A stretch of 64,000 nucleotides of DNA from Octopus sinensis (lineage: Eukaryota), in the NCBI RefSeq assembly GCF_006345805.1, contig NC_043015.1:21948001-22012000 (forward strand), read 5' to 3'. The notes under the pieces are model-generated. The model was not told the DNA's origin, did not search any database, and saw nothing but the letters and a program-made list of their open reading frames with translations. Positions 1-61,810 of this stretch are shown here, in pieces. A program made the position numbers and the translations under genes. Within the stretch, counting starts at the first letter, position 1. The number at the start of each line of letters is the position of its first letter.

Positions 1-37
1 TTGTTTTAACGGTCATTTTCAGAGCATTTTGTTCGAT

Positions 38-110
38 GGCCCGATAACTGAAGAGAGGCCGGCGTGGACTTCCGCCCTGACATCCGAAACTCGGAGTTTT
101 AACATGGCTG
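38..110 (+). ncRNA. Candidate type I hammerhead motif (degenerate stems) in a PLE-type repeat end
   Basis: CTGAAGA at 48-54, GAAAC at 86-90, near-palindromic ACTCGGAGT followed by T98. Stem I is only TAA/TTA plus distal GGCC/GGCT, and the base of stem II is imperfect. Confidence 0.35.
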
Positions 111-191
111 CCGAATAATTGTCGCATATTATATTTACAGATAAATATATATATATATGTGAGTGTGTGTGTGTGTGTATGTAGTATATAT

Positions 192-233
<42 letters not shown>

Positions 234-282
234 ATAGGTGAGAGAGTTGGTGTGTGAAAACACGTCGTTGGATGTATAAAAA

Positions 283-1240
283 ATAAAAAGAGTGAAAAAA
301 CTACAGAAGGCTTGTGTTATAAGGTTAAAGAATATATTTCAGTCCTTGTTAGAAAACTGTTATAAAATTTTGTGTATAGTAACATAGGTTTTGGAGGAAT
401 AACCGGTTTCGTATATTCTTTTCAAATTTCTCAAATTTCTTTACCTCCATCGTGTCATATCTTCGTTATGAAGTGAAGATTTGCAGGCAGGTGAAGGTAA
501 TCAGGGATTTCTTCCGGTATAAGGGAGATAATCGCTTTATATATTTTTTCTTTTTTTCAATGACATGAATTTCCTTGTATAAAAATATTAGAATGGTTAA
601 CTTTTGGTTTATATTTTTCAATGAAGAATGTTTCCTTGTCTAATCTAATTTGTGTTGGTATATCAATAGCACATTGATATAATGCAACGATTAAAAACTG
701 TGGCAGTATTTCCTTTGCGCATTTCTCAATATGTTCACTAAAGGGTAACATTCTGTATTCTGCGGCTGAGCGATAATCCCGTGCACCCACGTAGTTTTGG
801 TGGCAGCACGAGCATCTTATGACATAAATTATGTTTTCTGAAGCACAAGTAAAATTAGATTTGATCTTGAATGTTTGTCCCTCTGTGAAGAAGAATACTG
901 ATCCTTTTAGAACGCTTGGGCATGTTGCGCAGTTTGGTCTACAACATTTTTTTTACATTTTGCATCCGTAATTTCAGAAAACAATTTTACATTTGTGAGG
1001 ATATTTTTTAGTGATATAGGTTGTTTGTAGCTTTTAATGATTTTATGCATGTTTAGAATTTCCTTTAATTTGGGGTCATAATGAAGCATTGGTAAATTCT
1101 AGGTGATGATGGTGAAGGCTTCTTTGTTTCTGGGGTTGTATGTGGATATGTAAGGCAGTACTTTCCGGGAAGGTGTGTTGCTGTGTTGAACTTTTCTTAA
1201 AGATTCTATGTCGATTTCTGTTGCACGTCTGGAACTTCCC
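283..1240 (-). mobile_element. 5'-truncated Penelope-like retroelement (linker, Zn-knuckle, GIY-YIG endonuclease, 3' end), pseudogenised
   Basis: Minus-strand translation across frameshifts and stops: LPYISTYNPRN..NLPMLHYDPKLKEIL..KSYKQPISLKNILT, CxRPNCATCP, NFTCASENIIYVIRCSCCHQNYVG, PFSEHIEKC..RLDKETFFIEKYKPKVN. These match PLE GIY-YIG motifs and the copy at 56200-56620. Confidence 0.85.
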
Positions 1241-1451
1241 CTGCCTGGAACTCTTCACTTCATAAGGAAGATATGACACGGTGTATGTAAAGAAATTTCA
1301 GAAATTTGAAAAGAATATACGAAACCGGTTATTTCTCCAAAACCTATCTTACTATACACAAAATTTTCTAACATTTTTCTAACATAACGACTTAAATATA
1401 TTCTTTAACCTTATAACACAAACCTTCTGTAGTTTTTTCACTCCTTTTTAT
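1235..1451 (+). repeat. Inverted copy of the PLE 3' end (pseudo-LTR); pairs with 283-497
   Basis: The reverse complement aligns to 283-497 (e.g. gagtgaaaaaactacagaagg(c/t)ttgtgttataaggttaaagaatatattt) with scattered substitutions. Confidence 0.9.
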
Positions 1452-7100: not shown

Positions 7101-8387
7101 TCATAACCGTATGTAATTCCCTCTGAACTCATGTCGCGATACCATTCTGTCCACTTGCATAGGCATATTATACTTAGCTGTCCATCATCAACAAAAATCA
7201 CCCCATGTAAATAATAGAGCCGCTATATTTTGAGATATTTATATATTACTGGTTTTAGCTGATAGCTGGTCAAAATATTACAGTAGTTTCGCACACACTA
7301 CTGCACTAGACAATATTGAATACTCCTCGCCAATAGGGTCAAGGATCAGGTAGTTTTCGGGCAGAATTTCGACTAATTGTCAATACTATCAAATCAACTA
7401 TAACATTTTGACCAGTTATGTGCCATGACATATAAATATCAAATATTATAACTATGACAAATCATAACTATAACATTTTTATCCGTACGACTGCATGACG
7501 CGTTGATGATGAATGATCGGAATAAGTAATGCTTTCATTCATTGAAATATTGGTTTATACTTTGAAATATGAAATGAAACTTTGAAGGAGTCGCTTATTC
7601 TTATGTCATTTGGTTTAAAAGCCTTTGTGAACGGCATCTGCGGTAATGGATGTTTCAGGTTCACGCTTTTTATTTCATAGATTTTCATATTTCTGGTTGT
7701 GTGTCTATATTTCTGTATGTGAGTATATGTGTATAAGCATATACGTATACGCATACATGAATGTATACATGTATAGATAAATGTATAATTCCGTGCATAT
7801 ATATGTGTTCATGCGAGTACATATGTGAATATGTATGCGTTTGCACGGGTTTTAGCAAAAGGAAATCTCGCATATAAACTCATTCTTTAAAGACAGGAAT
7901 TAATAGTATTAATTACAAAAGTTTACTTAAAAGTATTATTTTGGGACATTCATTAAGCAGCAACGCTATTTCGCGTCTTCGATCGTATGGTATTTATGAA
8001 GGTTATAATAATATTACAACGAAATACAGAAATTAAATATTAATGTCTTTTAGAGACACCACACTTCGTTATGCTCGCATAATATGCTACAAAGTGTATT
8101 AAACGATTTTATAAGTCAATACTACTGTGCTCTAGTTTGTAGTATAATATGAAACGTCTAAATAAAAATCCGTGTCGGTTATGAATTCAATAGAAAGTCT
8201 GTAGACATAAACTTAAAAAGGAATGAAATAAAAATGGTGAGCTAGTATCAATAATTTTTGTACGTTTCGTTCAAAAGAGAACCAGGCTCGATGCACCATC
8301 TGATACTTGGAAACGAGCAATTCTCAGTACTGGAAATCGGAGCTTTCAGTTAAAATACATACATACATATATACATACATACATGAA

Positions 8388-8619
8388 GGGTGGCGAGCTG
8401 GCAGAAACGTTAGCGCGCCGGGCGAAATGCTTAGCGCTATTTCGTCTACCGTTACGTTCTGAGTTCAAATTCCGCCGAGGTCGACTTTGCCTTTCAACAT
8501 TTCGAGGTCGATAAATTAAGTACCAGTTACGCACTGGGGTCGATATAATCGACTTAATCCACTTGTCTGTCCTTGTTTGTCCCCTCTGTGTTTAGCCCCT
8601 TGTGGGTAGTAAAGAAATA
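8388..8619 (+). mobile_element. Full-length family-1 tRNA-derived SINE (tail type 1)
   Basis: Head ggcgagctggcagaaacgttagc, B-box GTTCAAATTCC, core gactttgcctttca..tcgataaattaagtaccag, tail ttgtgggtagtaaagaaata. Matches many other copies in the window. Confidence 0.9.
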
Positions 8620-18025: not shown

Positions 18026-18985
18026 AGGTAGCGAGCTGGCAGAATCGTTAGCACGCCGGGCGAATTGCTTAGGTAGTAATTTGTCCGTTTTTACGTTCTG
18101 AGTTCAAATTCCGCTCAGGTCGATTTTTCCTTTTATTCTTTCGGGGTCGATTAAATAAGTACCAGTTACGCACTGGAGTCGATATAATCGACTTAATCCG
18201 TTAGTCTGTCCTTGTTTGTCCTCTCTATGTTTAGCCCCTTGTGGATAGTAAAGAAATAGGTATTTCGTCTGTCTCACGCTCTGAGTTCAATTTCCGCCGA
18301 GGTCGACTTTATTTTCCTCTTTTCGGGCTCGATAAATTAGGTACGTACTGGAGTCGATATAATTGACTGGCCCCTCTCCCAAAATTTCGGGCATTGTGCT
18401 TAGAGTAGAAAAGAATATTTTATTATTTGTAAGGTGGCGAATTGGTAGGACATTTAGTACGCCAGTTAAAATGCTTAGCGGTATTTCGTCTGCGTTACGT
18501 TGTGAGTTCAAATTCCGCCGAGGTCGACTTTGCCTTTCATCCTTTCGGGGTCGATAAATTAAGTACCAGTTACGCACTGGGGTCGATGTAATCGACTTAA
18601 TACCTATGTCTGTCCTTGTTTGTCCCCTCTGTGTTTAGCCCCTTGTGGGTAATAAAGAAATAGGTATTTAATCTGTGCTACGTTCTGAGTTCAAATTCCG
18701 CCGAGGTTGACTTTGCCTTTCATCCTTTCGGGATCGATTAAATAAGTACCAGTTACGCACTGGGGTCGATATAATCGACTTAATCCCTCTATTTGTCTTT
18801 GTCCTCTCTGTTTTTAGCCCCTTGTGGGTAGTAAAGAAATAAGTATTTCGTCTGCTGCTACGTTCTGAGTTCAAATTCCGCCGGTGTCGATAAATTAAGT
18901 AGCAATTGCGTACAAGGGTATATCTAACCGACCAGTCCTCTCCCCCAAAATTTCGGGCCTTCTGCGGAGAGTAATAAAGAATATT
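18026..18985 (+). mobile_element. Array of five family-1 SINE bodies forming two composite units
   Basis: Order: head-body-tail1-body-tail2 (18026-~18410), then head-body-tail1-body-tail1-body-tail2 (~18430-18985). Confidence 0.9.
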
Positions 18986-28027: not shown

Positions 28028-28127
28028 NNNNNNNNNNNNNNNNNNNNNNNNNNNNNNNNNNNNNNNNNNNNNNNNNNNNNNNNNNNNNNNNNNNNNNNNN
28101 NNNNNNNNNNNNNNNNNNNNNNNNNNN
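28028..28127. other. Assembly gap (100 N)
   Basis: Run of exactly 100 N. Confidence 1.
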
Positions 28128-52468: not shown

Positions 52469-53711
52469 ATATATATACATATATATATACATATAAGAGA
52501 ATTTTTAATGGAGATACTTATCCGTGCGTAGTACAACTGTTTTTGTTATGAGCGAAGGAGTAATAAAAAACTTTATATGATCCTATAACAATTTCGCTTG
52601 TTATATTTTTAATCATTCATCGTCCACGCACCACTTAAGTCTATTGAATCGATTTATCTCCTCACCCGAACTAGTAAGTCTAGTGTCAAAATTTGCAACC
52701 AATTTTGTGTTTGGGGGGATCAAGTGTTTGCTTAACATATTCGATCAAGTATCGAAGTTAAATATCTTGCAAATTTTTCATCACATACATACTGATGATG
52801 TAACTGAAACAGAAGTGAGTCTTTTCGAATGAATTAGAGGTCTTTTAAGGCCTACTACCTAGCAATAAAAAGAAGTGTCAGACCGGAAACCTGAATCGAA
52901 TAATTGCCCAAGTGAGTTTGAATTTATTTATTTATGCTAAACCGGTCGATGGTCATATCTGCAATCTATGGTCTACAGTGTTACACGAACTGGCTATCAC
53001 TCTCCATCGAGCGGATTTCACTTGCATGTCATCTCTATCGATCATAGACTATAGTACTTGATTCTAATTCAGAAAAGAAACAATAAAATTTGTGCGGAGG
53101 AATTTATCCATGCGGTCAAACTCACTACGGATGAAAGATTGGCAAAGTTGGAATTCGAAGCGAAGAAGGAAAGCACGTAAAGTAAAAAGCTGATGAGCCT
53201 GTGCCTATATCAAAACCCTTTTTGATTTTTAGTAATAAGAGAATAATCCCAAATTTGTGAGAGTGTATTAAGTACTTGAGAAGTGCTTTGTTATGTCTTT
53301 GTACATGAAAATGAAAGAAGTCGACTGCGGCAGGATTCGAAACTGATAGGGCACAAATGTTTCTTCACGAGAGAAAGTGATGGAAAATTATCTCCATTTC
53401 TACTGGACTGGTATTTTATTTATGAAACCAGGAAGGACGAAAGGCGGAGTAGATTACTCGCTTCATTCGATCTCCTGATACAAAGAACCGGAAACAAAAT
53501 CTCGTAAAGTATTCTCCAACGCTATAATGATTAGCAATCACTGTCTAATGGACATTATATTAAATTACAGGTGGTTTTAGTTCCGTTAACATCATGTTGC
53601 GTAGGACCTGAACACAGGTGTTGCCAAAAATGCAATTCGACGATGGTAAAACACTAGTCTGTACAATATGTGCATAGTGATTATAAAGGTGGGGTAACGT
53701 TTAAATATATT

Positions 53712-54376
53712 TTTTATACTCCAAACACAAGGCCCAAAATTTTGGGGGAGGGGCCAGCCGATTAGATCGACCCCAATGCGCAACTGGTATTTAATTTATT
53801 GACCCCGAAAGGATGAAAGAAAATGTCGACCTCTGCGGAATTTGAACTCAGAACATAGACAAAATATCACTAAGCATTTCCCCAGGAGTGCTAACGTTTC
53901 TGCAAGCGAGCCTAAGTATATTTATTTCTTTATTACACACAGGGGTCTAAACATAGAGGGGACAAACAAGGACAGACAAAGGGATGAAGTCGATTACATC
54001 GACCCCAATGCGTAACTGGTACTTATTTAATCGACCCCGAAAGGATTAAAGGAAAAGTCGACCTCGGCGGAATTTGAACTCAGAAAGTAAAGATAGACAA
54101 AATACTGCTTAGTATTTCGCTCGTTGTACTAACGTTTCTTATTTCTTTATTACCCAGAAGGGACTAAACATAGAGGGGACAAAGAAGGCATACAAACGGA
54201 TTAACTCTAATACATAGACCCCAGTGTTTAAGTGGTACTTAATTTATCCACCCCGAAAGGATGAAAAGCAAAGTCGACCACGGCGGAATTTGAACTCAGA
54301 ACGTAACGGCAGACGAAATACCTCTAATCATGTCGCCCGGCGTACTAACGACTCTGCCAGCTTGCCTAAGTATATT
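53712..54376 (-). mobile_element. Composite of three family-1 SINEs with a 13-bp direct repeat
   Basis: Minus strand order: tail1 copy, tail1 copy, tail2 copy. gcctaagtatatt occurs at 53910-53922 and 54364-54376. Confidence 0.85.
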
Positions 54377-55315
54377 GTTAACTGAAGGAGTAAATACACC
54401 GGTGAAGAATTTAATTTTAGTGTTTTTAAGAATATTTTAAACTTATGACACAGTAACAGAATATATAGCAGTAATATAATGGTTTCTATTGAGTTCATTG
54501 TAATATAACTTCTTCGTTGAATATTATTCGCTTGTAAAACATATCAAAAATCAATATATAACACATCTCATCTTCACCTAATAAAGTGATAAAGTTTTTT
54601 TTTTTTTTCAGACATTGTTTAACAGAATATAATTAACTGAGACAACAAAATGTTAATTGTTATTTCAACACAACTTGACATACACTTGCCAGTAATTAAA
54701 TTAGTTTTCTCAAAATATATAGTTAGAAGAACAACAAAAAAATTCATGTCGGTTGTTCTTGTTTCATAATTATTTAAATGTTGCTGCCTTTTAACTTTAA
54801 TTATTTACACCGCAAAATAGAGGTGTTACACATAAACGGAAGAAGCAAAAATAAAGTCTGGTGAAAAAGAAAAAAAAACAACGATGTGTTAAGTTCAAAC
54901 GAAATTAGCTTTAGGTTATTAATAGTTTAGTTTTTATATTTTCTTTTGAATTTTTTGTTTTCAATTTTCTGGAGGCTGCAAGTTGTGTTAATGTAAGGTA
55001 TTGTAAGAGGAGAGTCAAGATTTCCGAGAATTAGATTTCCTTCACAAATACTTATACTTTTTCCAGCGCCCACTGTCGCTGATATTGAAAAAGTGAAATC
55101 AAACAATGATAAATATCAAAGTGAGTTATATACAGTAGCGGTAACACATCGTGACGTATTTTTGCCATTTCAATATGGCTAACCCCTAAGGGTGGATGCT
55201 ACTGTAGTTTTTAGCCCCAGGAGGACACACTCCTCCAGCTGGCCATAGACACACTATCTGTGTCCTGTCAGTATTTGCAAAGGGAAGTCATCCTTCCCGT
55301 CTTCAACTTATGATA

Positions 55316-55360
55316 CACACGGACTCGAGTTTCGAGGTATTGACCTCTCGTCAGCGTGTG
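55316..55360 (-). ncRNA. Type I hammerhead ribozyme, intact core
   Basis: Exact reverse complement of 55627-55671; predicted cleavage between 55322 and 55321 on the minus strand. Confidence 0.9.
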
Positions 55361-55626
55361 ACAATCATAGTTGTCGCCGAGAATTAGATTTCCTTCACAA
55401 ATACTTATACTTTTTCCAGCGCCCACTGTCGCTAGCATCCAACCTTAGGGGTTAGCCATATTGAAATGGCAAAAATACGTCACGATGTGTTACCGCTACT
55501 GTATATAACTCACTTTGATATTTATCATTGTTTGATTTCACTTTTTCAATATCAGCGACAGTGGGCGCTGGAAAAAGTATAAGTATTTGTGAAGGAAATC
55601 TAATTCTCGGCGACAGCTATGATTGT

Positions 55627-55671
55627 CACACGCTGACGAGAGGTCAATACCTCGAAACTCGAGTCCGTGTG
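55627..55671 (+). ncRNA. Type I hammerhead ribozyme, intact core
   Basis: CACACG CTGACGA GAGGT-CAAT-ACCTC GAA AC-TCGA-GT C CGTGTG: 6-bp stem I extended by ATGAT/ATCAT and CAGCT/AGTTG, canonical CUGANGA and GAAA, 5-bp stem II closed by G10.1-C11.1, GUC cleavage site after 55665, palindromic ACTCGAGT stem III. Confidence 0.9.
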
Positions 55672-56043
55672 TATCATAAGTTGAAGACGGGAAGGATGAC
55701 TTCCCTTTGCAAATACTGACAGGACACAGATAGTGTGTCTATGGCCAGCTGGAGGAGTGTGTCCTCCTGGGGCTAAAAACTACAGTAGCATCCACCCTTA
55801 GGGGTTAGCCATATTGAAATGGCAAAAATACGTCACGATGTGTTACCGCTACTGTATATAACTCACTTTGATATTTATCATTGTTATATATATATATATA
55901 TATATAACATATATATATATATGTTTGTATGTGTGCATGTGTATGTATACATGTATGTATGTGTGTGTATGTAAGAATGCATATGTGTGTATGTATATCT
56001 ATATATATATGCATGTATATATATATTCATATATCTATAAGTG

Positions 56044-56084
<41 letters not shown>

Positions 56085-56103
56085 ATATATGTGTATATAT
56101 ATG

Positions 56104-56150
<47 letters not shown>

Positions 56151-56199
56151 ATAATTCAGTAAATGGTGGGGTTGTGTTAACCGCACGTGGAGAACTTCA

Positions 56200-57000
56200 C
56201 GCACCACATCCAACCCCATCAGTTAAAAAAATGTGGGCGCCCTAACTGTGGCACCTGCCCCTTCCTACTTGAAAACTCTGAACTTAATTTCAAACAAGGA
56301 ACAAAGTTCAAAATCAAAACCAACTTCTCCTTTTCCTCCGAGAACCTCATCTATGTTCTCACATGCGCTGGTTGCTAACATAATTGTGTTGGACAATATA
56401 GCCTTCCTTTACGCAGACGAGTACCGGTCCATAAAGAACAGATAAATCTCCCACAATACCGTCAAATTCCACTCAGTAGCCACATAGAATCTTGCGCTAG
56501 AGATAAAAATCCCAAATTTTACATATTCCCTTTCTACTAATGTAAAGACAGAATATCTACACAACAAAGAATCAACAAGGTGAATGTTTTTATTGAAAAA
56601 TTACAAACGTGTCTCAATAGGCAAACTCCACGGTGACCTTTTTCTAGCATCCTATCTGACATAAAAATTATATAAGCATCCTGTTTGAAAAAAAAATCCA
56701 GCATTCCTATTAAAGAGCATAAAATCCACAGAAATGTCTCCCCTTACTCATAGGAACTGGATAACTCCTTCCCCATGTCCTGTTATGATACACAATCACC
56801 CAACTCTTTCAAACTAAACACTACATTTAAATACATGCATCGTAATCCTCCAAAGAAGTTTTTCCGAGGACTAATATTTAACTCTAAAAGCATAAGACAC
56901 TATAACGTAGTGGTATATTTATTTATTAATTTTTATATTTATGTTTTATTATTTTTTTGAAAAATCATTGTGATTTTCATTTTCCCCTTCCCGAATTAAA
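56200..57000 (+). mobile_element. 5'-truncated Penelope-like element (Zn-knuckle, GIY-YIG endonuclease, 3' UTR), pseudogenised
   Basis: KKCGRPNCGTCPFL..NFSFSSENLIYVLTCAGC*HNCVGQ..LRRRVPVHKEQI..IPLSSHIESCA..KFYIFPFY..RINKVNVFIEKL; homologous to 557-960 (-). Confidence 0.85.
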
Positions 57001-57151: not shown

Positions 57152-57202
<51 letters not shown>

Positions 57203-57389
57203 GAGAAAGAAGCAACAAGAATGGATTGGTTTTTTGTACTAAAAACCAATCCATTCTTGTTGCTTCTTTCCCGTTTATAATCACCCCACATTACCGTATG
57301 GATAACACCATATAGTTTTTCTGGTGCATCTAAGTTAAGTACCACATTCAAGTAAATTCATTGGAAGTTACTTGAATCTTAATTGCTTT

Positions 57390-60085: not shown

Positions 60086-61808
60086 ATCCTTAAATCCTTA
60101 AATCCTAAAAAATGTTTTAGCCCGAAGGCCACGGCCTTGCTGGGGCACCACCGCTGAATGAGCTACACTAATTTGTGAATCCACCTCTGATACGTGGCAC
60201 TTGATCAACAAGGGAGTTCGATGCTGCTGCCCGCATCTGTGTCTCCTGTCGTGAGATAGGTTCATCTGGGACTCCCGACAAGAAGAGATCCAGTTTAGTT
60301 TTAAAGAAACCCACATCCACACCATGTAAGTCTCTCAGGCATTTAGGGAGGATGTTATAGAGGTGTGGTCCTCTGAAACCCAGGCTGTTGCAGTATCTGG
60401 ACCTGTATTTTGATGGTGATGTTGGAATCCTTGGCACCATGCAGTGGTGCCCCGTCCTGCGGTTGGGGTAACTTTGAATGCCAAAGTTTGGGACAAGACC
60501 CTCCAGGATTTTTCAGATGTATATCACCGCATATCTCTCCCGCCTCCGCTCTAGGGAGAAGAGGTTTAATACCTTCAGTCTTTCCCAGTAGCTGATATTT
60601 TGCATTGAGACGATTTTCTTTGTGTAGCTTTTCTGAATTGCTTCAAGTTCTCCTGTTAGTTTTATATTGTGTGGTGACCACAGTTGGGAGCAGTAGACCA
60701 AGCGGCTGAGGACGAATGTTTTCCATAGGACCATCAGTGTCTCCTTCTCTCTTCTTCTGAAAGTTCGGAGAATCCATCCAGCTAGCCGTCTGCATTTTAT
60801 CACCAGATTAGCAATATGCACTTGGAAAGATGCATCATTGCTCATGTCAATGCCCAGGTCACGCACTGATTTTGACGCAGGGATTGCAATTCTTCCTGGG
60901 CCAGTGTATCCAGTCTGCACGTCGTTTACCTTTGTGTGCCAGTAGCGCAGGGCCTGGAACTTACCTGCACTAAACTGCATGTTGTTGTCCTCAGCCCACC
61001 TGTATATTTTCAGGGATTTGTACTGCGTGGGAGACTTTTGTGCCATCTGCATAGCTAGCAAGGGTGGTCATCGTAGCAACTGAAGGCATGTCTGAAAGGG
61101 CCACTATGAACATCAGTGGCCCCAAGACAGTGCCCTGTGGGACACCGCTTTCTATTTGTGTTTCCTTGGAGGTGGCTCCATTGCTCACAGCTGCCTGTTT
61201 TCTGTCTTTTAGGAAGTTGTGCAGCCACTCTCCAAGTTTTCCGCCTATGCCGAAACTAGACAGTTTGTGACAGATTATACCATGGTCGACCTTATCAAAG
61301 GCTTTTGCAAAGTCGAGATATATTACATCCACATTTGAGCCATTTAGTAGCTGTTTCAACACCCAGTCATAGTGTTGCAGGAGCTGTGTTAGGCAGCTTC
61401 TACCTGGTCGAAATCCATGCTGGGTGTCAGACAGCAAGTCATTTTCTTCAAGGAACATGATTAGTTTCTTACGGACTATTCGTTCCATGACTTTGATGAT
61501 GTGTGAGGTCAGAGATATAGGCCTATAATTTTTAGCATCTGCTCTGCTACCTCCCTTATGGATAGGGCATATTAGCCCCTCTTTCAATTTGACTGGAAGC
61601 TTACCCCTTGCAAGAAAGCTCTGAAAAAGAAGCTGTAGCGGTGTTGCAAGGGCTCGTTTGCACGATTTGAGAAGGATCGCTGGGAATCCATCAGGTCCAG
61701 CAGCTGAGTTTGTGTCAATCTCATCTATGACTAGTGTGATATCATCATCTTCGATGTTGATGTACTCAAATTTTGCCTCTTTGGCCGCAGGTAAAGTGGC
61801 AAAGAATT

Positions 61809-61810
<2 letters not shown>
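60086..61810 (-). mobile_element. 5'-truncated CR1-clade LINE (RT and C-terminus of ORF2, 3' UTR, (TTTAAGGA)n tail), pseudogenised
   Basis: SAAGPDGFPAILLK..PIHKGGSR..NYRPISLTSH..QHGFRPGRSC..YLDFAKAFDKVDH..SGVPQGTVLGPLMF..YADGTK (catalytic DD changed to DG). A frameshift near 61000-61040 leads to VRDLGI..SLERRRERY..LDLFLSGVPDEP. Tandem tail at 60086-60107. Confidence 0.95.

What the first reader, a model, noticed from the sequence alone, without database searches (positions are those of the whole stretch)
55024..55885. Young 353-bp hammerhead-ribozyme retroelement (candidate cephalopod non-LTR retrozyme / circular RNA)
Seen: a non-coding 353-bp unit with one fully canonical type I hammerhead (CUGACGA, GAAA, GUC site, 6-bp stem I with two extension helices, 5-bp stem II), present in both orientations, with only 2 substitutions over ~860 bp. 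Established: metazoan non-LTR retrozymes are ~170-400-bp tandem repeats with type I hammerheads that yield circular RNAs (reported in axolotl, coral and mussel; related to newt satellite 2, Schistosoma Sm-alpha and cricket pDo500). Inference: this is a recently mobile member of such a family in an octopus-like genome. I am not aware of a described cephalopod family but cannot check.
Basis: partly seen in the sequence, partly recalled or inferred. Interest (0 to 1): 0.92.

Follow-up and report, generated by a model that had tools for sequence, protein, structure and literature searches.

The report
Hammerhead-ribozyme retroelement, Penelope-style inverted insertion
A real, very recently inserted copy of a small non-coding mobile element carrying a self-cleaving hammerhead ribozyme sits here in a head-to-head arrangement typical of Penelope-like retrotransposons; it is a new example of a known and widespread kind, not a new kind.

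Summary
Positions 55024-55885 consist of one non-coding 353-nt unit (43% GC). It is written once backwards (410 nt, 55024-55433) and once forwards (453 nt, 55433-55885), with two substitutions in all. Each orientation carries one complete type I hammerhead: helix I 6 bp, helix II 5 bp, helix III 2 bp with a palindromic UCGA loop. It scores 32.2 bits on Rfam Hammerhead_1, just under the 34-bit cut-off. A descriptor scan expects 0.04 such motifs per shuffled window.

The unit fits metazoan non-LTR retrozymes in size, GC content, lack of coding, strong self-pairing and canonical hammerhead. However, each strand has only one ribozyme, so this locus cannot release a unit-length or circular RNA. Copy number, tandem arrays and circles could not be tested.

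The geometry is new relative to the finding. The two copies meet 5' end to 5' end, and both cross the same 353|1 joint. One 3' end abuts a (TA)n array, and the other runs 78 nt further. A bona fide Penelope-like insertion in the same window (245-1448) has the same architecture.

Most likely reading: cDNA was primed on both target DNA strands from a multimeric or circular RNA, probably by Penelope-like machinery. It is a new member of a known kind, of moderate interest.

The parts
55024..55433 (-). Inverted copy, 410 nt = unit positions 22..353 then 1..78 (1.16 units). Its 3' end (unit 78) lies at the outer left edge, next to the unique flank ...AAGATTT.
55316..55360 (-). Type I hammerhead of the inverted copy. 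Predicted cleavage is between 55322 and 55321 on the minus strand.
55433..55433 (.). Inversion junction where the 5' ends of the two copies meet (unit 22 of the inverted copy, unit 254 of the direct copy). One shared base (T) is the only microhomology.
55433..55885 (+). Direct copy, 453 nt = unit positions 254..353 then 1..353 (1.28 units). Its 3' end (unit 353) abuts the (TA)n array.
55627..55671 (+). Type I hammerhead of the direct copy: CACACG / CUGACGA / GAGGU-CAAU-ACCUC / GAAA / C-UCGA-G / UC | CGUGUG. Cleavage falls at 55665/55666.
55532..55533 (+). Head-to-tail joint (unit 353|1) in the direct copy. The same joint occurs in the inverted copy at 55102|55101. It shows that the template was a tandem multimer or a circle of the 353-nt unit.
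55886..56152 (.). (TA)n/(TG)n microsatellite flanking the direct copy; presumed target site. TA arrays cover 5.8% of the window.
56193..56630 (+). Context only: a decayed, 5'-truncated Penelope-like endonuclease remnant with two in-frame stops. It lies between two (TA)n arrays and has no sequence similarity to the 353-nt unit.

Best explanation
This is one recent insertion of a non-autonomous, non-coding retroelement whose 353-nt unit carries a canonical type I hammerhead ribozyme. It is of the same kind as metazoan non-LTR retrozymes.

The RNA template contained the unit joined head to tail. It was therefore either a linear transcript of at least about 1.9 units or a 353-nt circle. Reverse transcription was primed on both strands of the cut target. 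The bottom strand, inside a (TA)n array, started at unit position 353 and ran 453 nt. The top strand, at ...AAGATTT, started at unit position 78 and ran 410 nt. The two cDNAs were then joined 5' end to 5' end at 55433.

The enzyme was most likely a Penelope-like RT/GIY-YIG protein supplied in trans.

The hammerhead has a 2-bp helix III with a palindromic loop, so it probably cleaves best when two copies pair as a dimer. With one ribozyme per strand, this locus is a dead-end daughter copy rather than a source of circular RNA.

Shown: the anatomy, the ribozyme motif, the head-to-tail joint, the outward-facing 3' ends, and the presence of Penelope-like elements with the same architecture in the same window. 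Inferred: the RNA intermediate, priming on both strands, the identity of the enzyme, dimeric cleavage, and circles.
For: Ribozyme and unit:
- Hammerhead_1 matches the full model at 32.2 bits, and the loop 2 'AAUA' is aligned to the family consensus.
- A descriptor scan finds only these two motifs, against 0.04 expected.
- The unit fold has z = -5.96, and 63% of bases pair in the circular fold.
- No ORF exceeds 66 codons. GC is 43%.

Template and geometry:
- Both copies cross the same 353|1 joint. The 3' ends face outward and the 5' ends meet at 55433.
- Neither junction shows homology between the flank and the element.

Dimeric cleavage:
- The cofold minimum-energy structure of two cores is the double hammerhead with an 8-bp intermolecular helix III, at -33.9 kcal/mol.
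- The monomeric active fold (-8.7) is less stable than an inactive hairpin (-14.5).

In-window control, a coding Penelope-like remnant at 245-1448:
- tblastn matches RT+GIY-YIG proteins.
- It has an inverted copy about 214 nt long of its own 3' end placed head to head upstream.
- (TA)n arrays lie at both outer ends, and a tail of about 45 nt is present at one end only.

Literature:
- Penelope-like insertions are partial tandems with an adjacent inverted 5'-truncated copy, a tail at one end and a (TA)n target bias (PMC8557442).
- A purified Penelope-like protein cleaves and extends both DNA strands. It prefers AT-rich ATT sites and starts reverse transcription at internal sites not homologous to the target (PMC11167929).
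- Animal retrozymes co-occur with Penelope-like elements and are related to their pseudo-LTRs (PMC7229834; bioRxiv 10.64898/2026.07.22.740005).

Age: the arms differ by 0.3% here, against 8-20% in the old Penelope-like insertion.
Against: - Only one locus is available, so the element's canonical ends, copy number and activity are unknown.
- No target-site duplication is evident. The best candidate, a shared 10-mer, occurs by chance in 6-10% of control pairs.
- The left end is not in a microsatellite. Adjacency to a TA array has a chance probability of about 6%, so the target-preference evidence is weak.
- The 78-nt difference between the two 3' ends is longer than the 30-40 nt tail described for Penelope-like elements.
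- The hammerhead is the canonical type rather than the minimal type usually found in autonomous metazoan Penelope-like elements (PMC4209133).
- The Rfam score is below the curated cut-off.
- No intact Penelope-like ORF lies in the window, and the two remnants show no similarity to the unit.
- LINE reverse transcriptases can also give head-to-head inversions by twin priming.
Confidence: 0.6

Rival explanations
1. The same non-autonomous hammerhead element was mobilised by a LINE reverse transcriptase through classical twin priming. The (TA)n run would then be a 3' tail or target of that LINE.
For: Head-to-head segments with outward 3' ends are what L1-type twin priming yields (established knowledge). 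A LINE RT remnant lies in the window at 60994-61809 (RVT_1, E = 1e-25). Cervera and de la Pena (PMC7229834) left 'LINEs or PLEs' open as mobilisers.
Against: No poly(A) is present, no target-site duplication, and no primer-template microhomology at either junction. The matching architecture, including a one-sided tail, is seen on a coding Penelope-like element in the same window. A Penelope-like protein is the one shown to extend both strands (PMC11167929).
Confidence: 0.13
2. The locus is a fragment of a hammerhead-bearing satellite array (newt satellite 2 type) that was rearranged at the DNA level by inversion or fold-back repair, not a retrotransposition product.
For: The unit is tandemly joined head to tail. 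Retrozyme-like repeats can behave as satellites (bioRxiv 10.64898/2026.07.22.740005).
Against: Only 2.4 units are present in all. A simple inversion of part of a contiguous array would place unit 253|254 at the breakpoints, not 78 at the outer edge and 22|254 at the junction. Fold-back copying of the present right arm would continue into the (TA)n flank, not into unit 1..78 (reasoning in the report).
Confidence: 0.1
3. The unit is simply the pseudo-LTR of an autonomous Penelope-like element: a solo or internally deleted copy belonging to the endonuclease remnant 300 bp downstream.
For: A Penelope endonuclease remnant in the same orientation starts at about 56193, separated only by a microsatellite. 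In frogs, retrozyme consensus sequences match Penelope-like termini (bioRxiv 10.64898/2026.07.22.740005).
Against: The 353-nt period with a clean 353|1 joint in both copies means the template repeated every 353 nt, with no ORF between. The unit has no similarity to the sequence downstream of either Penelope-like remnant, and no hammerhead is found there. The remnant carries stop codons while the unit copies differ by 0.3%. No Penelope-like coding homology lies to the left of 55024. The hammerhead is canonical, not minimal.
Confidence: 0.1
4. The inverted structure is an assembly or read artefact, such as a chimeric or palindromic long read collapsed next to a microsatellite.
For: Penelope-type tandem/inverted structures and microsatellites are known to trouble assemblies (PMC8557442). 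The window contains a 100-N gap, but it is 27 kb away.
Against: The structure is not a symmetric palindrome: the arms are offset by 120 nt and have different outer ends. The two arms each carry a private substitution.
Confidence: 0.07

Closest known systems
Metazoan non-LTR retrozymes (Cervera & de la Pena 2020, PMC7229834; e.g. mussel, coral, axolotl Rtz_353)
   Same: Canonical type I hammerhead. Non-coding unit within 170-400 nt. GC below 45%. Highly self-paired RNA. Head-to-tail joined units. Co-occurrence with Penelope-like elements in the genome. Helix III of 2 bp plus tetraloop, as described for invertebrate and HHR_Amex2 motifs.
   Different: Here there are only 1.16 + 1.28 units with one ribozyme per strand, arranged head to head rather than as a same-sense tandem. 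Expression and circular RNA are untested. There is no sequence similarity to any retrievable family.
Penelope-like element insertions and their pseudo-LTR hammerheads (PMC8557442, PMC4209133, PMC11167929)
   Same: Partial tandem plus an adjacent inverted 5'-truncated copy. Outward 3' ends. One end longer than the other (tail). (TA)n at an end. No homology between target and RT start. A hammerhead that should work best as a dimer through a palindromic helix III.
   Different: No RT/GIY-YIG ORF. The period is 353 nt instead of 3-4 kb. The hammerhead is canonical (helix I 6 bp, helix II 5 bp, real helix III) rather than the minimal metazoan Penelope type. The 'tail' is 78 nt rather than 30-40.
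Newt satellite 2 / amphibian hammerhead repeats
   Same: Unit of about 330-350 nt, type I hammerhead, weak helix III with a palindromic loop, dimer-dependent cleavage expected.
   Different: Those are long arrays with very many copies. This is a 2.4-unit isolated insertion.
Schistosoma Sm-alpha (SINE-like hammerhead element)
   Same: Short non-coding dispersed retroelement with a canonical type I hammerhead whose stem-loop II resembles this one (Rfam consensus).
   Different: No tRNA-like head was detected in the window, there is no A-rich tail, and a head-to-tail joint is present.
L1 twin-priming inversions
   Same: Two cDNA segments joined 5' to 5' with outward 3' ends.
   Different: No poly(A), target-site duplication or primer microhomology. 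The template is repetitive or circular.

Membership tests
Metazoan non-LTR retrozyme | Type I hammerhead with complete catalytic core and canonical helices | tested here: met
   Full-length Rfam Hammerhead_1 alignment at 32.2 bits (cut-off 34) with all core bases present. Descriptor scan: helices of 6/5/2 bp, 0.04 expected by chance.
Metazoan non-LTR retrozyme | Short (about 150-450 nt) non-coding unit of low GC (<45-50%) | tested here: met
   353 nt, 43% GC, longest open frame 66 codons, no protein relatives.
Metazoan non-LTR retrozyme | Same-sense tandem repeats with a hammerhead in every unit (two or more), so that a unit-length RNA can be excised | tested here: not met
   At this locus there are 1.16 and 1.28 units with one hammerhead per strand. 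By the scheme of bioRxiv 10.64898/2026.07.22.740005 these are 'monomer' derivatives. Other loci of the family could not be searched.
Metazoan non-LTR retrozyme | Highly self-paired monomer RNA | tested here: met
   Minimum free energy -121 kcal/mol, z = -5.96 against 100 shuffles. Circular fold -117 kcal/mol with 63% of bases paired.
Metazoan non-LTR retrozyme | Multi-copy in the genome and expressed as linear and circular RNA | not testable with these tools
   No copy elsewhere in the 64 kb. None in the JGI metagenome, IMG/VR or prokaryote collections. No called ORF relatives. No host genome or transcriptome is available.
Metazoan non-LTR retrozyme | Co-existence with Penelope-like elements in the same genome | tested here: met
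   Two RT/GIY-YIG-related remnants at 590-1269 (-) and 56193-56630 (+).
Penelope-like element pseudo-LTR | Repeat flanks an RT + GIY-YIG ORF (the tandem period equals the whole element) | tested here: not met
   The period is 353 nt with a clean 353|1 joint. There is no Penelope-like coding homology inside or to the left of the locus, and the nearby endonuclease remnant is unrelated in sequence and much older.
Penelope-like element pseudo-LTR | Minimal hammerhead (helix II 7-8 bp, helix I 4-5 bp, no or vestigial helix III) as in metazoan Penelope-like elements (PMC4209133) | tested here: not met
   Helix I 6 bp, helix II 5 bp, helix III 2 bp plus a palindromic tetraloop. This is the 'canonical' class of the same paper.
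Penelope-type integration product | Partial tandem, adjacent inverted 5'-truncated copy, one-sided tail, AT-rich/(TA)n target | tested here: met
   for this locus. The same features occur on a coding Penelope-like copy at 245-1448. Caveats: the tail is 78 nt here, only one end is in (TA)n, and the TA-array chance is about 6%.
SINE-like hammerhead element (Sm-alpha type) | tRNA-derived pol III head and A-rich or simple 3' tail | tested here: inconclusive
   ARAGORN finds no tRNA-like sequence in the window, but degenerate A/B boxes were not searched. The (TA)n at the 3' end could be either a tail or a target.

The most novel reading that the evidence does not exclude
The locus may be a genomic footprint of a Penelope-like RT/endonuclease copying a circular 353-nt hammerhead RNA from both cut DNA strands at once. 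Two cDNAs longer than one unit would each have rolled past the same joint. That would be direct structural evidence, in a cephalopod, that retrozyme circles are the template and Penelope-like proteins the engine. A by-product is a 332-bp perfect hairpin that could feed small-RNA or ADAR pathways against the family.
Probability: 0.25. Interest if true: 0.6.

Novelty: new member of a known kind. Interest (0 to 1): 0.4.

Why it matters
Hammerhead-bearing retrozymes are already known across many animal phyla, including molluscs. One in a probable octopod therefore mainly fills a taxonomic gap.

The more useful point is mechanistic. The locus is young enough that its junctions are still readable. 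They show head-to-head copies, each longer than one unit, with outward 3' ends, unequal ends and no primer homology. These are the marks of Penelope-like integration.

This supports the current proposal that animal retrozymes are non-autonomous riders of Penelope-like elements. It also gives concrete coordinates for testing where reverse transcription starts on such RNAs.

Tried and rejected
1. Looking for other copies through called ORFs. A concatenate of the five longest stop-free translations of the unit found no protein at E <= 0.001 among 5.8 billion.

2. The exact 33-nt hammerhead core gave 0 hits in JGI metagenome contigs, IMG/VR and GTDB genomes.
   - A degenerate core with the same helix III found 25 metagenome loci.
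   - They share only the core; blastn of the unit found nothing at E < 0.01.
   - Only one of them (L018) lies next to Penelope-like coding sequence.

3. Target-site duplication. The best candidate, GTTGTGTTAA (54982 and 56171), is matched or exceeded in 6-10% of control pairs, so it was rejected.

4. Pfam on the two endonuclease remnants directly gave no hit. Their identity was established instead through relatives carrying RVT_1 + GIY-YIG. The word-indexed protein search with the remnant found nothing.

5. Naming the host. The closest RT (70% identity) comes from assembly GCA_024449705.1, whose organism I could not resolve.

6. DNA-level models (simple inversion, fold-back self-priming) are incompatible with the observed breakpoints.

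7. The miRNA-family matches at 55383-55604 merely reflect the hairpin made by the inversion junction. They are far below their cut-offs.

Full report
**1. What is in the sequence**

Positions 55024-55885 are built from a single 353-nt unit. I number it from 55533 (= 1) to 55885 (= 353).

- The reverse complement of 55024-55433 (410 nt) equals unit 22..353 followed by 1..78, with one mismatch at 55371.
- 55433-55885 (453 nt) equals unit 254..353 followed by 1..353, with one mismatch at 55442.

So there are 1.16 units backwards and 1.28 units forwards, with two substitutions in 862 nt.

No further copy lies in the 64 kb, even with a 7-nt word size. The unit is 43% GC. No frame of the circularised unit stays open for more than 66 codons. 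A search with those translations found no protein.

**2. The ribozyme**

Rfam's Hammerhead_1 model aligns end to end at 55627-55671 (+) and 55316-55360 (-), at 32.2 bits and E = 7e-6 for the 1.1 kb searched. This is 1.8 bits under the curated cut-off, which is why the whole-window gathering scan returned nothing.

The motif reads CACACG-CUGACGA-GAGGU(CAAU)ACCUC-GAAA-C(UCGA)G-UC|CGUGUG.

- Helix I is 6 bp.
- Helix II is 5 bp.
- Helix III is 2 bp (A15.1-U16.1 plus C-G), closed by the palindromic loop UCGA.
- Cleavage falls after GUC, at 55665/55666.

A descriptor of my own (core exact, helix I >=4, helix II >=2, helix III >=2) finds only these two motifs in the window and 0.04 per shuffled window. 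The motif is therefore not a chance match.

By the definitions in PMC4209133 this is the 'canonical' metazoan type I class: helix I 6 bp, helix II about 4 bp, helix III 1-2 bp with a small palindromic loop. It is not the 'minimal' variant usual in autonomous metazoan Penelope-like elements.

Beyond helix I, after a small internal loop, the strands pair for another 9-10 bp. No other ribozyme family matches either strand.

**3. How the ribozyme probably behaves (inference from folding)**

- For the 45-nt core, the active fold is worth -8.7 kcal/mol, against -14.5 for an inactive hairpin.
- For two cores together, the minimum-energy structure is the double hammerhead. ACUCGAGU pairs with itself to give an 8-bp helix III, at -33.9 kcal/mol.

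This is the behaviour reported for newt, axolotl and Penelope-type hammerheads, which cleave poorly alone and well as dimers (PMC7229834, PMC4209133).

The whole unit is strongly structured: z = -5.96, and 63% of bases pair in the circular fold.

**4. The geometry is the informative part**

- The two copies meet 5' end to 5' end at 55433 (unit 22 against unit 254), sharing one base.
- Their 3' ends point outward. Unit 78 lies at the left, against the unique sequence ...AAGATTT. Unit 353 lies at the right, against a (TA)n/(TG)n array at 55886-56152.
- Both copies run across the same 353|1 joint (55102|55101 and 55532|55533). The template therefore repeated every 353 nt. It was either a linear RNA of at least about 1.9 units or a circle.

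Three alternative models fail:

- A simple inversion within a contiguous array would leave 253|254 at the breakpoints. It does not.
- Fold-back copying of the present right arm would continue into the (TA)n flank rather than into unit 1..78.
- A symmetric palindromic read artefact is not what is seen. The arms are offset by 120 nt, and each has a private substitution.

Neither junction shows homology between flank and element. No convincing target-site duplication exists.

**5. A control inside the same window**

At 245-1448 lies a minus-strand element with these properties:

- Positions 590-1269 match residues about 509-745 of roughly 745-residue proteins. Those proteins carry RVT_1 plus a C-terminal GIY-YIG domain. 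This is a 5'-truncated Penelope-like element.
- Immediately upstream of its truncated 5' end sits an inverted copy of its own 3' region, about 214 nt long (1235-1448 against 285-496, 80-92% identical).
- Both outer ends abut (TA)n arrays.
- The direct copy runs about 45 nt further than the inverted one before the microsatellite.

That is the textbook Penelope signature: an inverted 5'-truncated neighbour, a tail at one end and (TA)n targets (PMC8557442). It is the same layout as the hammerhead locus, where the one-sided extension is 78 nt.

A second, more decayed endonuclease remnant (56193-56630, two stops, 42% identical to the first) lies between two (TA)n arrays, only 300 bp from the hammerhead element. 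The hammerhead unit has no similarity to either remnant or to their downstream sequence. Those remnants contain no hammerhead.

**6. Mechanism**

The purified Penelope-like protein PAc cleaves and extends both DNA strands. It prefers AT-rich ATT sites and starts reverse transcription at two internal RNA sites that are not homologous to the target, which explains the tail (PMC11167929).

Read in that light, the locus is one event:

- Bottom-strand priming in (TA)n, from unit 353.
- Top-strand priming at ...ATTT, from unit 78.
- Two cDNAs, of 453 and 410 nt.
- End-joining of the two cDNAs at 55433.

This fits the proposal that animal retrozymes are non-autonomous derivatives and passengers of Penelope-like elements (PMC7229834; bioRxiv 10.64898/2026.07.22.740005).

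LINE-type twin priming remains a rival, since a LINE RT remnant is present at 60994-61809. The absence of a poly(A), a target-site duplication and priming microhomology argues against it.

Each strand ends up with only one hammerhead, so this copy cannot excise a monomer. It is a daughter copy, not a master. A transcript through the whole locus would instead form a 332-bp hairpin (-697 kcal/mol).

**7. Age**

The arms differ by 0.3%, against 8-20% for the old Penelope-like insertion. The hammerhead insertion is therefore far younger, barring gene conversion between the arms.

**8. Host and novelty**

The window is 33.6% GC and crowded with microsatellites. The best named relative of its LINE RT is from the octopod Argonauta hians (66% identity), against about 50% for crustacean hits. 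An octopod-like origin is therefore supported but not proven. The closest hit (70% identity) is from an assembly I could not name.

In the open-access library, no paper joins 'hammerhead ribozyme' with octopus or cephalopod, other than a Penelope-like element survey that mentions cephalopod Naiads. Retrozyme-like repeats are, however, reported in molluscs and 'many other invertebrate genomes' (PMC7229834).

I rate this as a new member of a known kind.

**9. Limits**

No cephalopod genome or transcriptome can be searched here. Copy number, tandem multimers, the parent element, cleavage and circular RNA are all untested.

Noticed in passing
window 245-1448 (minus-strand element): A 5'-truncated Penelope-like element (RT C-terminus + GIY-YIG endonuclease with a CX4CX2C motif; coding match at 590-1269). 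It has an inverted copy of its own 3' end, about 214 nt long, at 1235-1448. (TA)n arrays lie at both outer ends, and a tail of about 45 nt is present at one end only.
   Followed up: yes
window 56193-56630 (+): A second Penelope-like endonuclease remnant with two in-frame stops, 42% identical to the first. It lies between the (TA)n arrays 55886-56152 and 57154-57201. This microsatellite has therefore received at least two Penelope-type insertions.
   Followed up: partly
window 60171-61809 (-): A LINE reverse-transcriptase remnant (RVT_1, E = 1e-25). The best named relative is a hypothetical protein of Argonauta hians (66% identity); the closest overall is 70% identical, from assembly GCA_024449705.1.
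   Followed up: partly
window 57196-57279: A palindrome with 42-nt arms (93% complementary) directly after a (TA)n array. It scores 40.1 bits on Rfam mir-16 (cut-off 36.5) in the local permissive scan, but was not reported in the whole-window gathering scan. It is probably a small hairpin insertion or a spurious match.
   Followed up: no
window 53741-54355; also 8349-8591, 18290-18634, 53280-53504: A repeat of about 216-232 bp, in tandem at 53.7-54.4 kb. Closely similar translated strings (…RNWYLIYRPR…ERQSRPRRNLNS…) occur elsewhere in the window, which suggests a dispersed SINE-like family. ARAGORN finds no tRNA gene in the window.
   Followed up: no
window 28028-28127: A run of 100 N (scaffold gap).
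   Followed up: no
loci L003-L027 (JGI metagenome contigs): Other type I hammerheads share the palindromic helix III (ACUCGAGUC) but no other similarity. L003 has two copies 662 nt apart, and L006, L009 and L020 have two copies 1104 nt apart (retrozyme-like tandems). L018 has the motif about 930 nt upstream of Penelope-like N-terminal coding sequence. A family of about 17 dispersed copies comes from one sample (Ga0126336).
   Followed up: partly
window 55102-55885: Any transcript through the whole locus would form a near-perfect 332-bp hairpin with a 120-nt loop. This is a potential substrate for small-RNA or A-to-I editing pathways.
   Followed up: no
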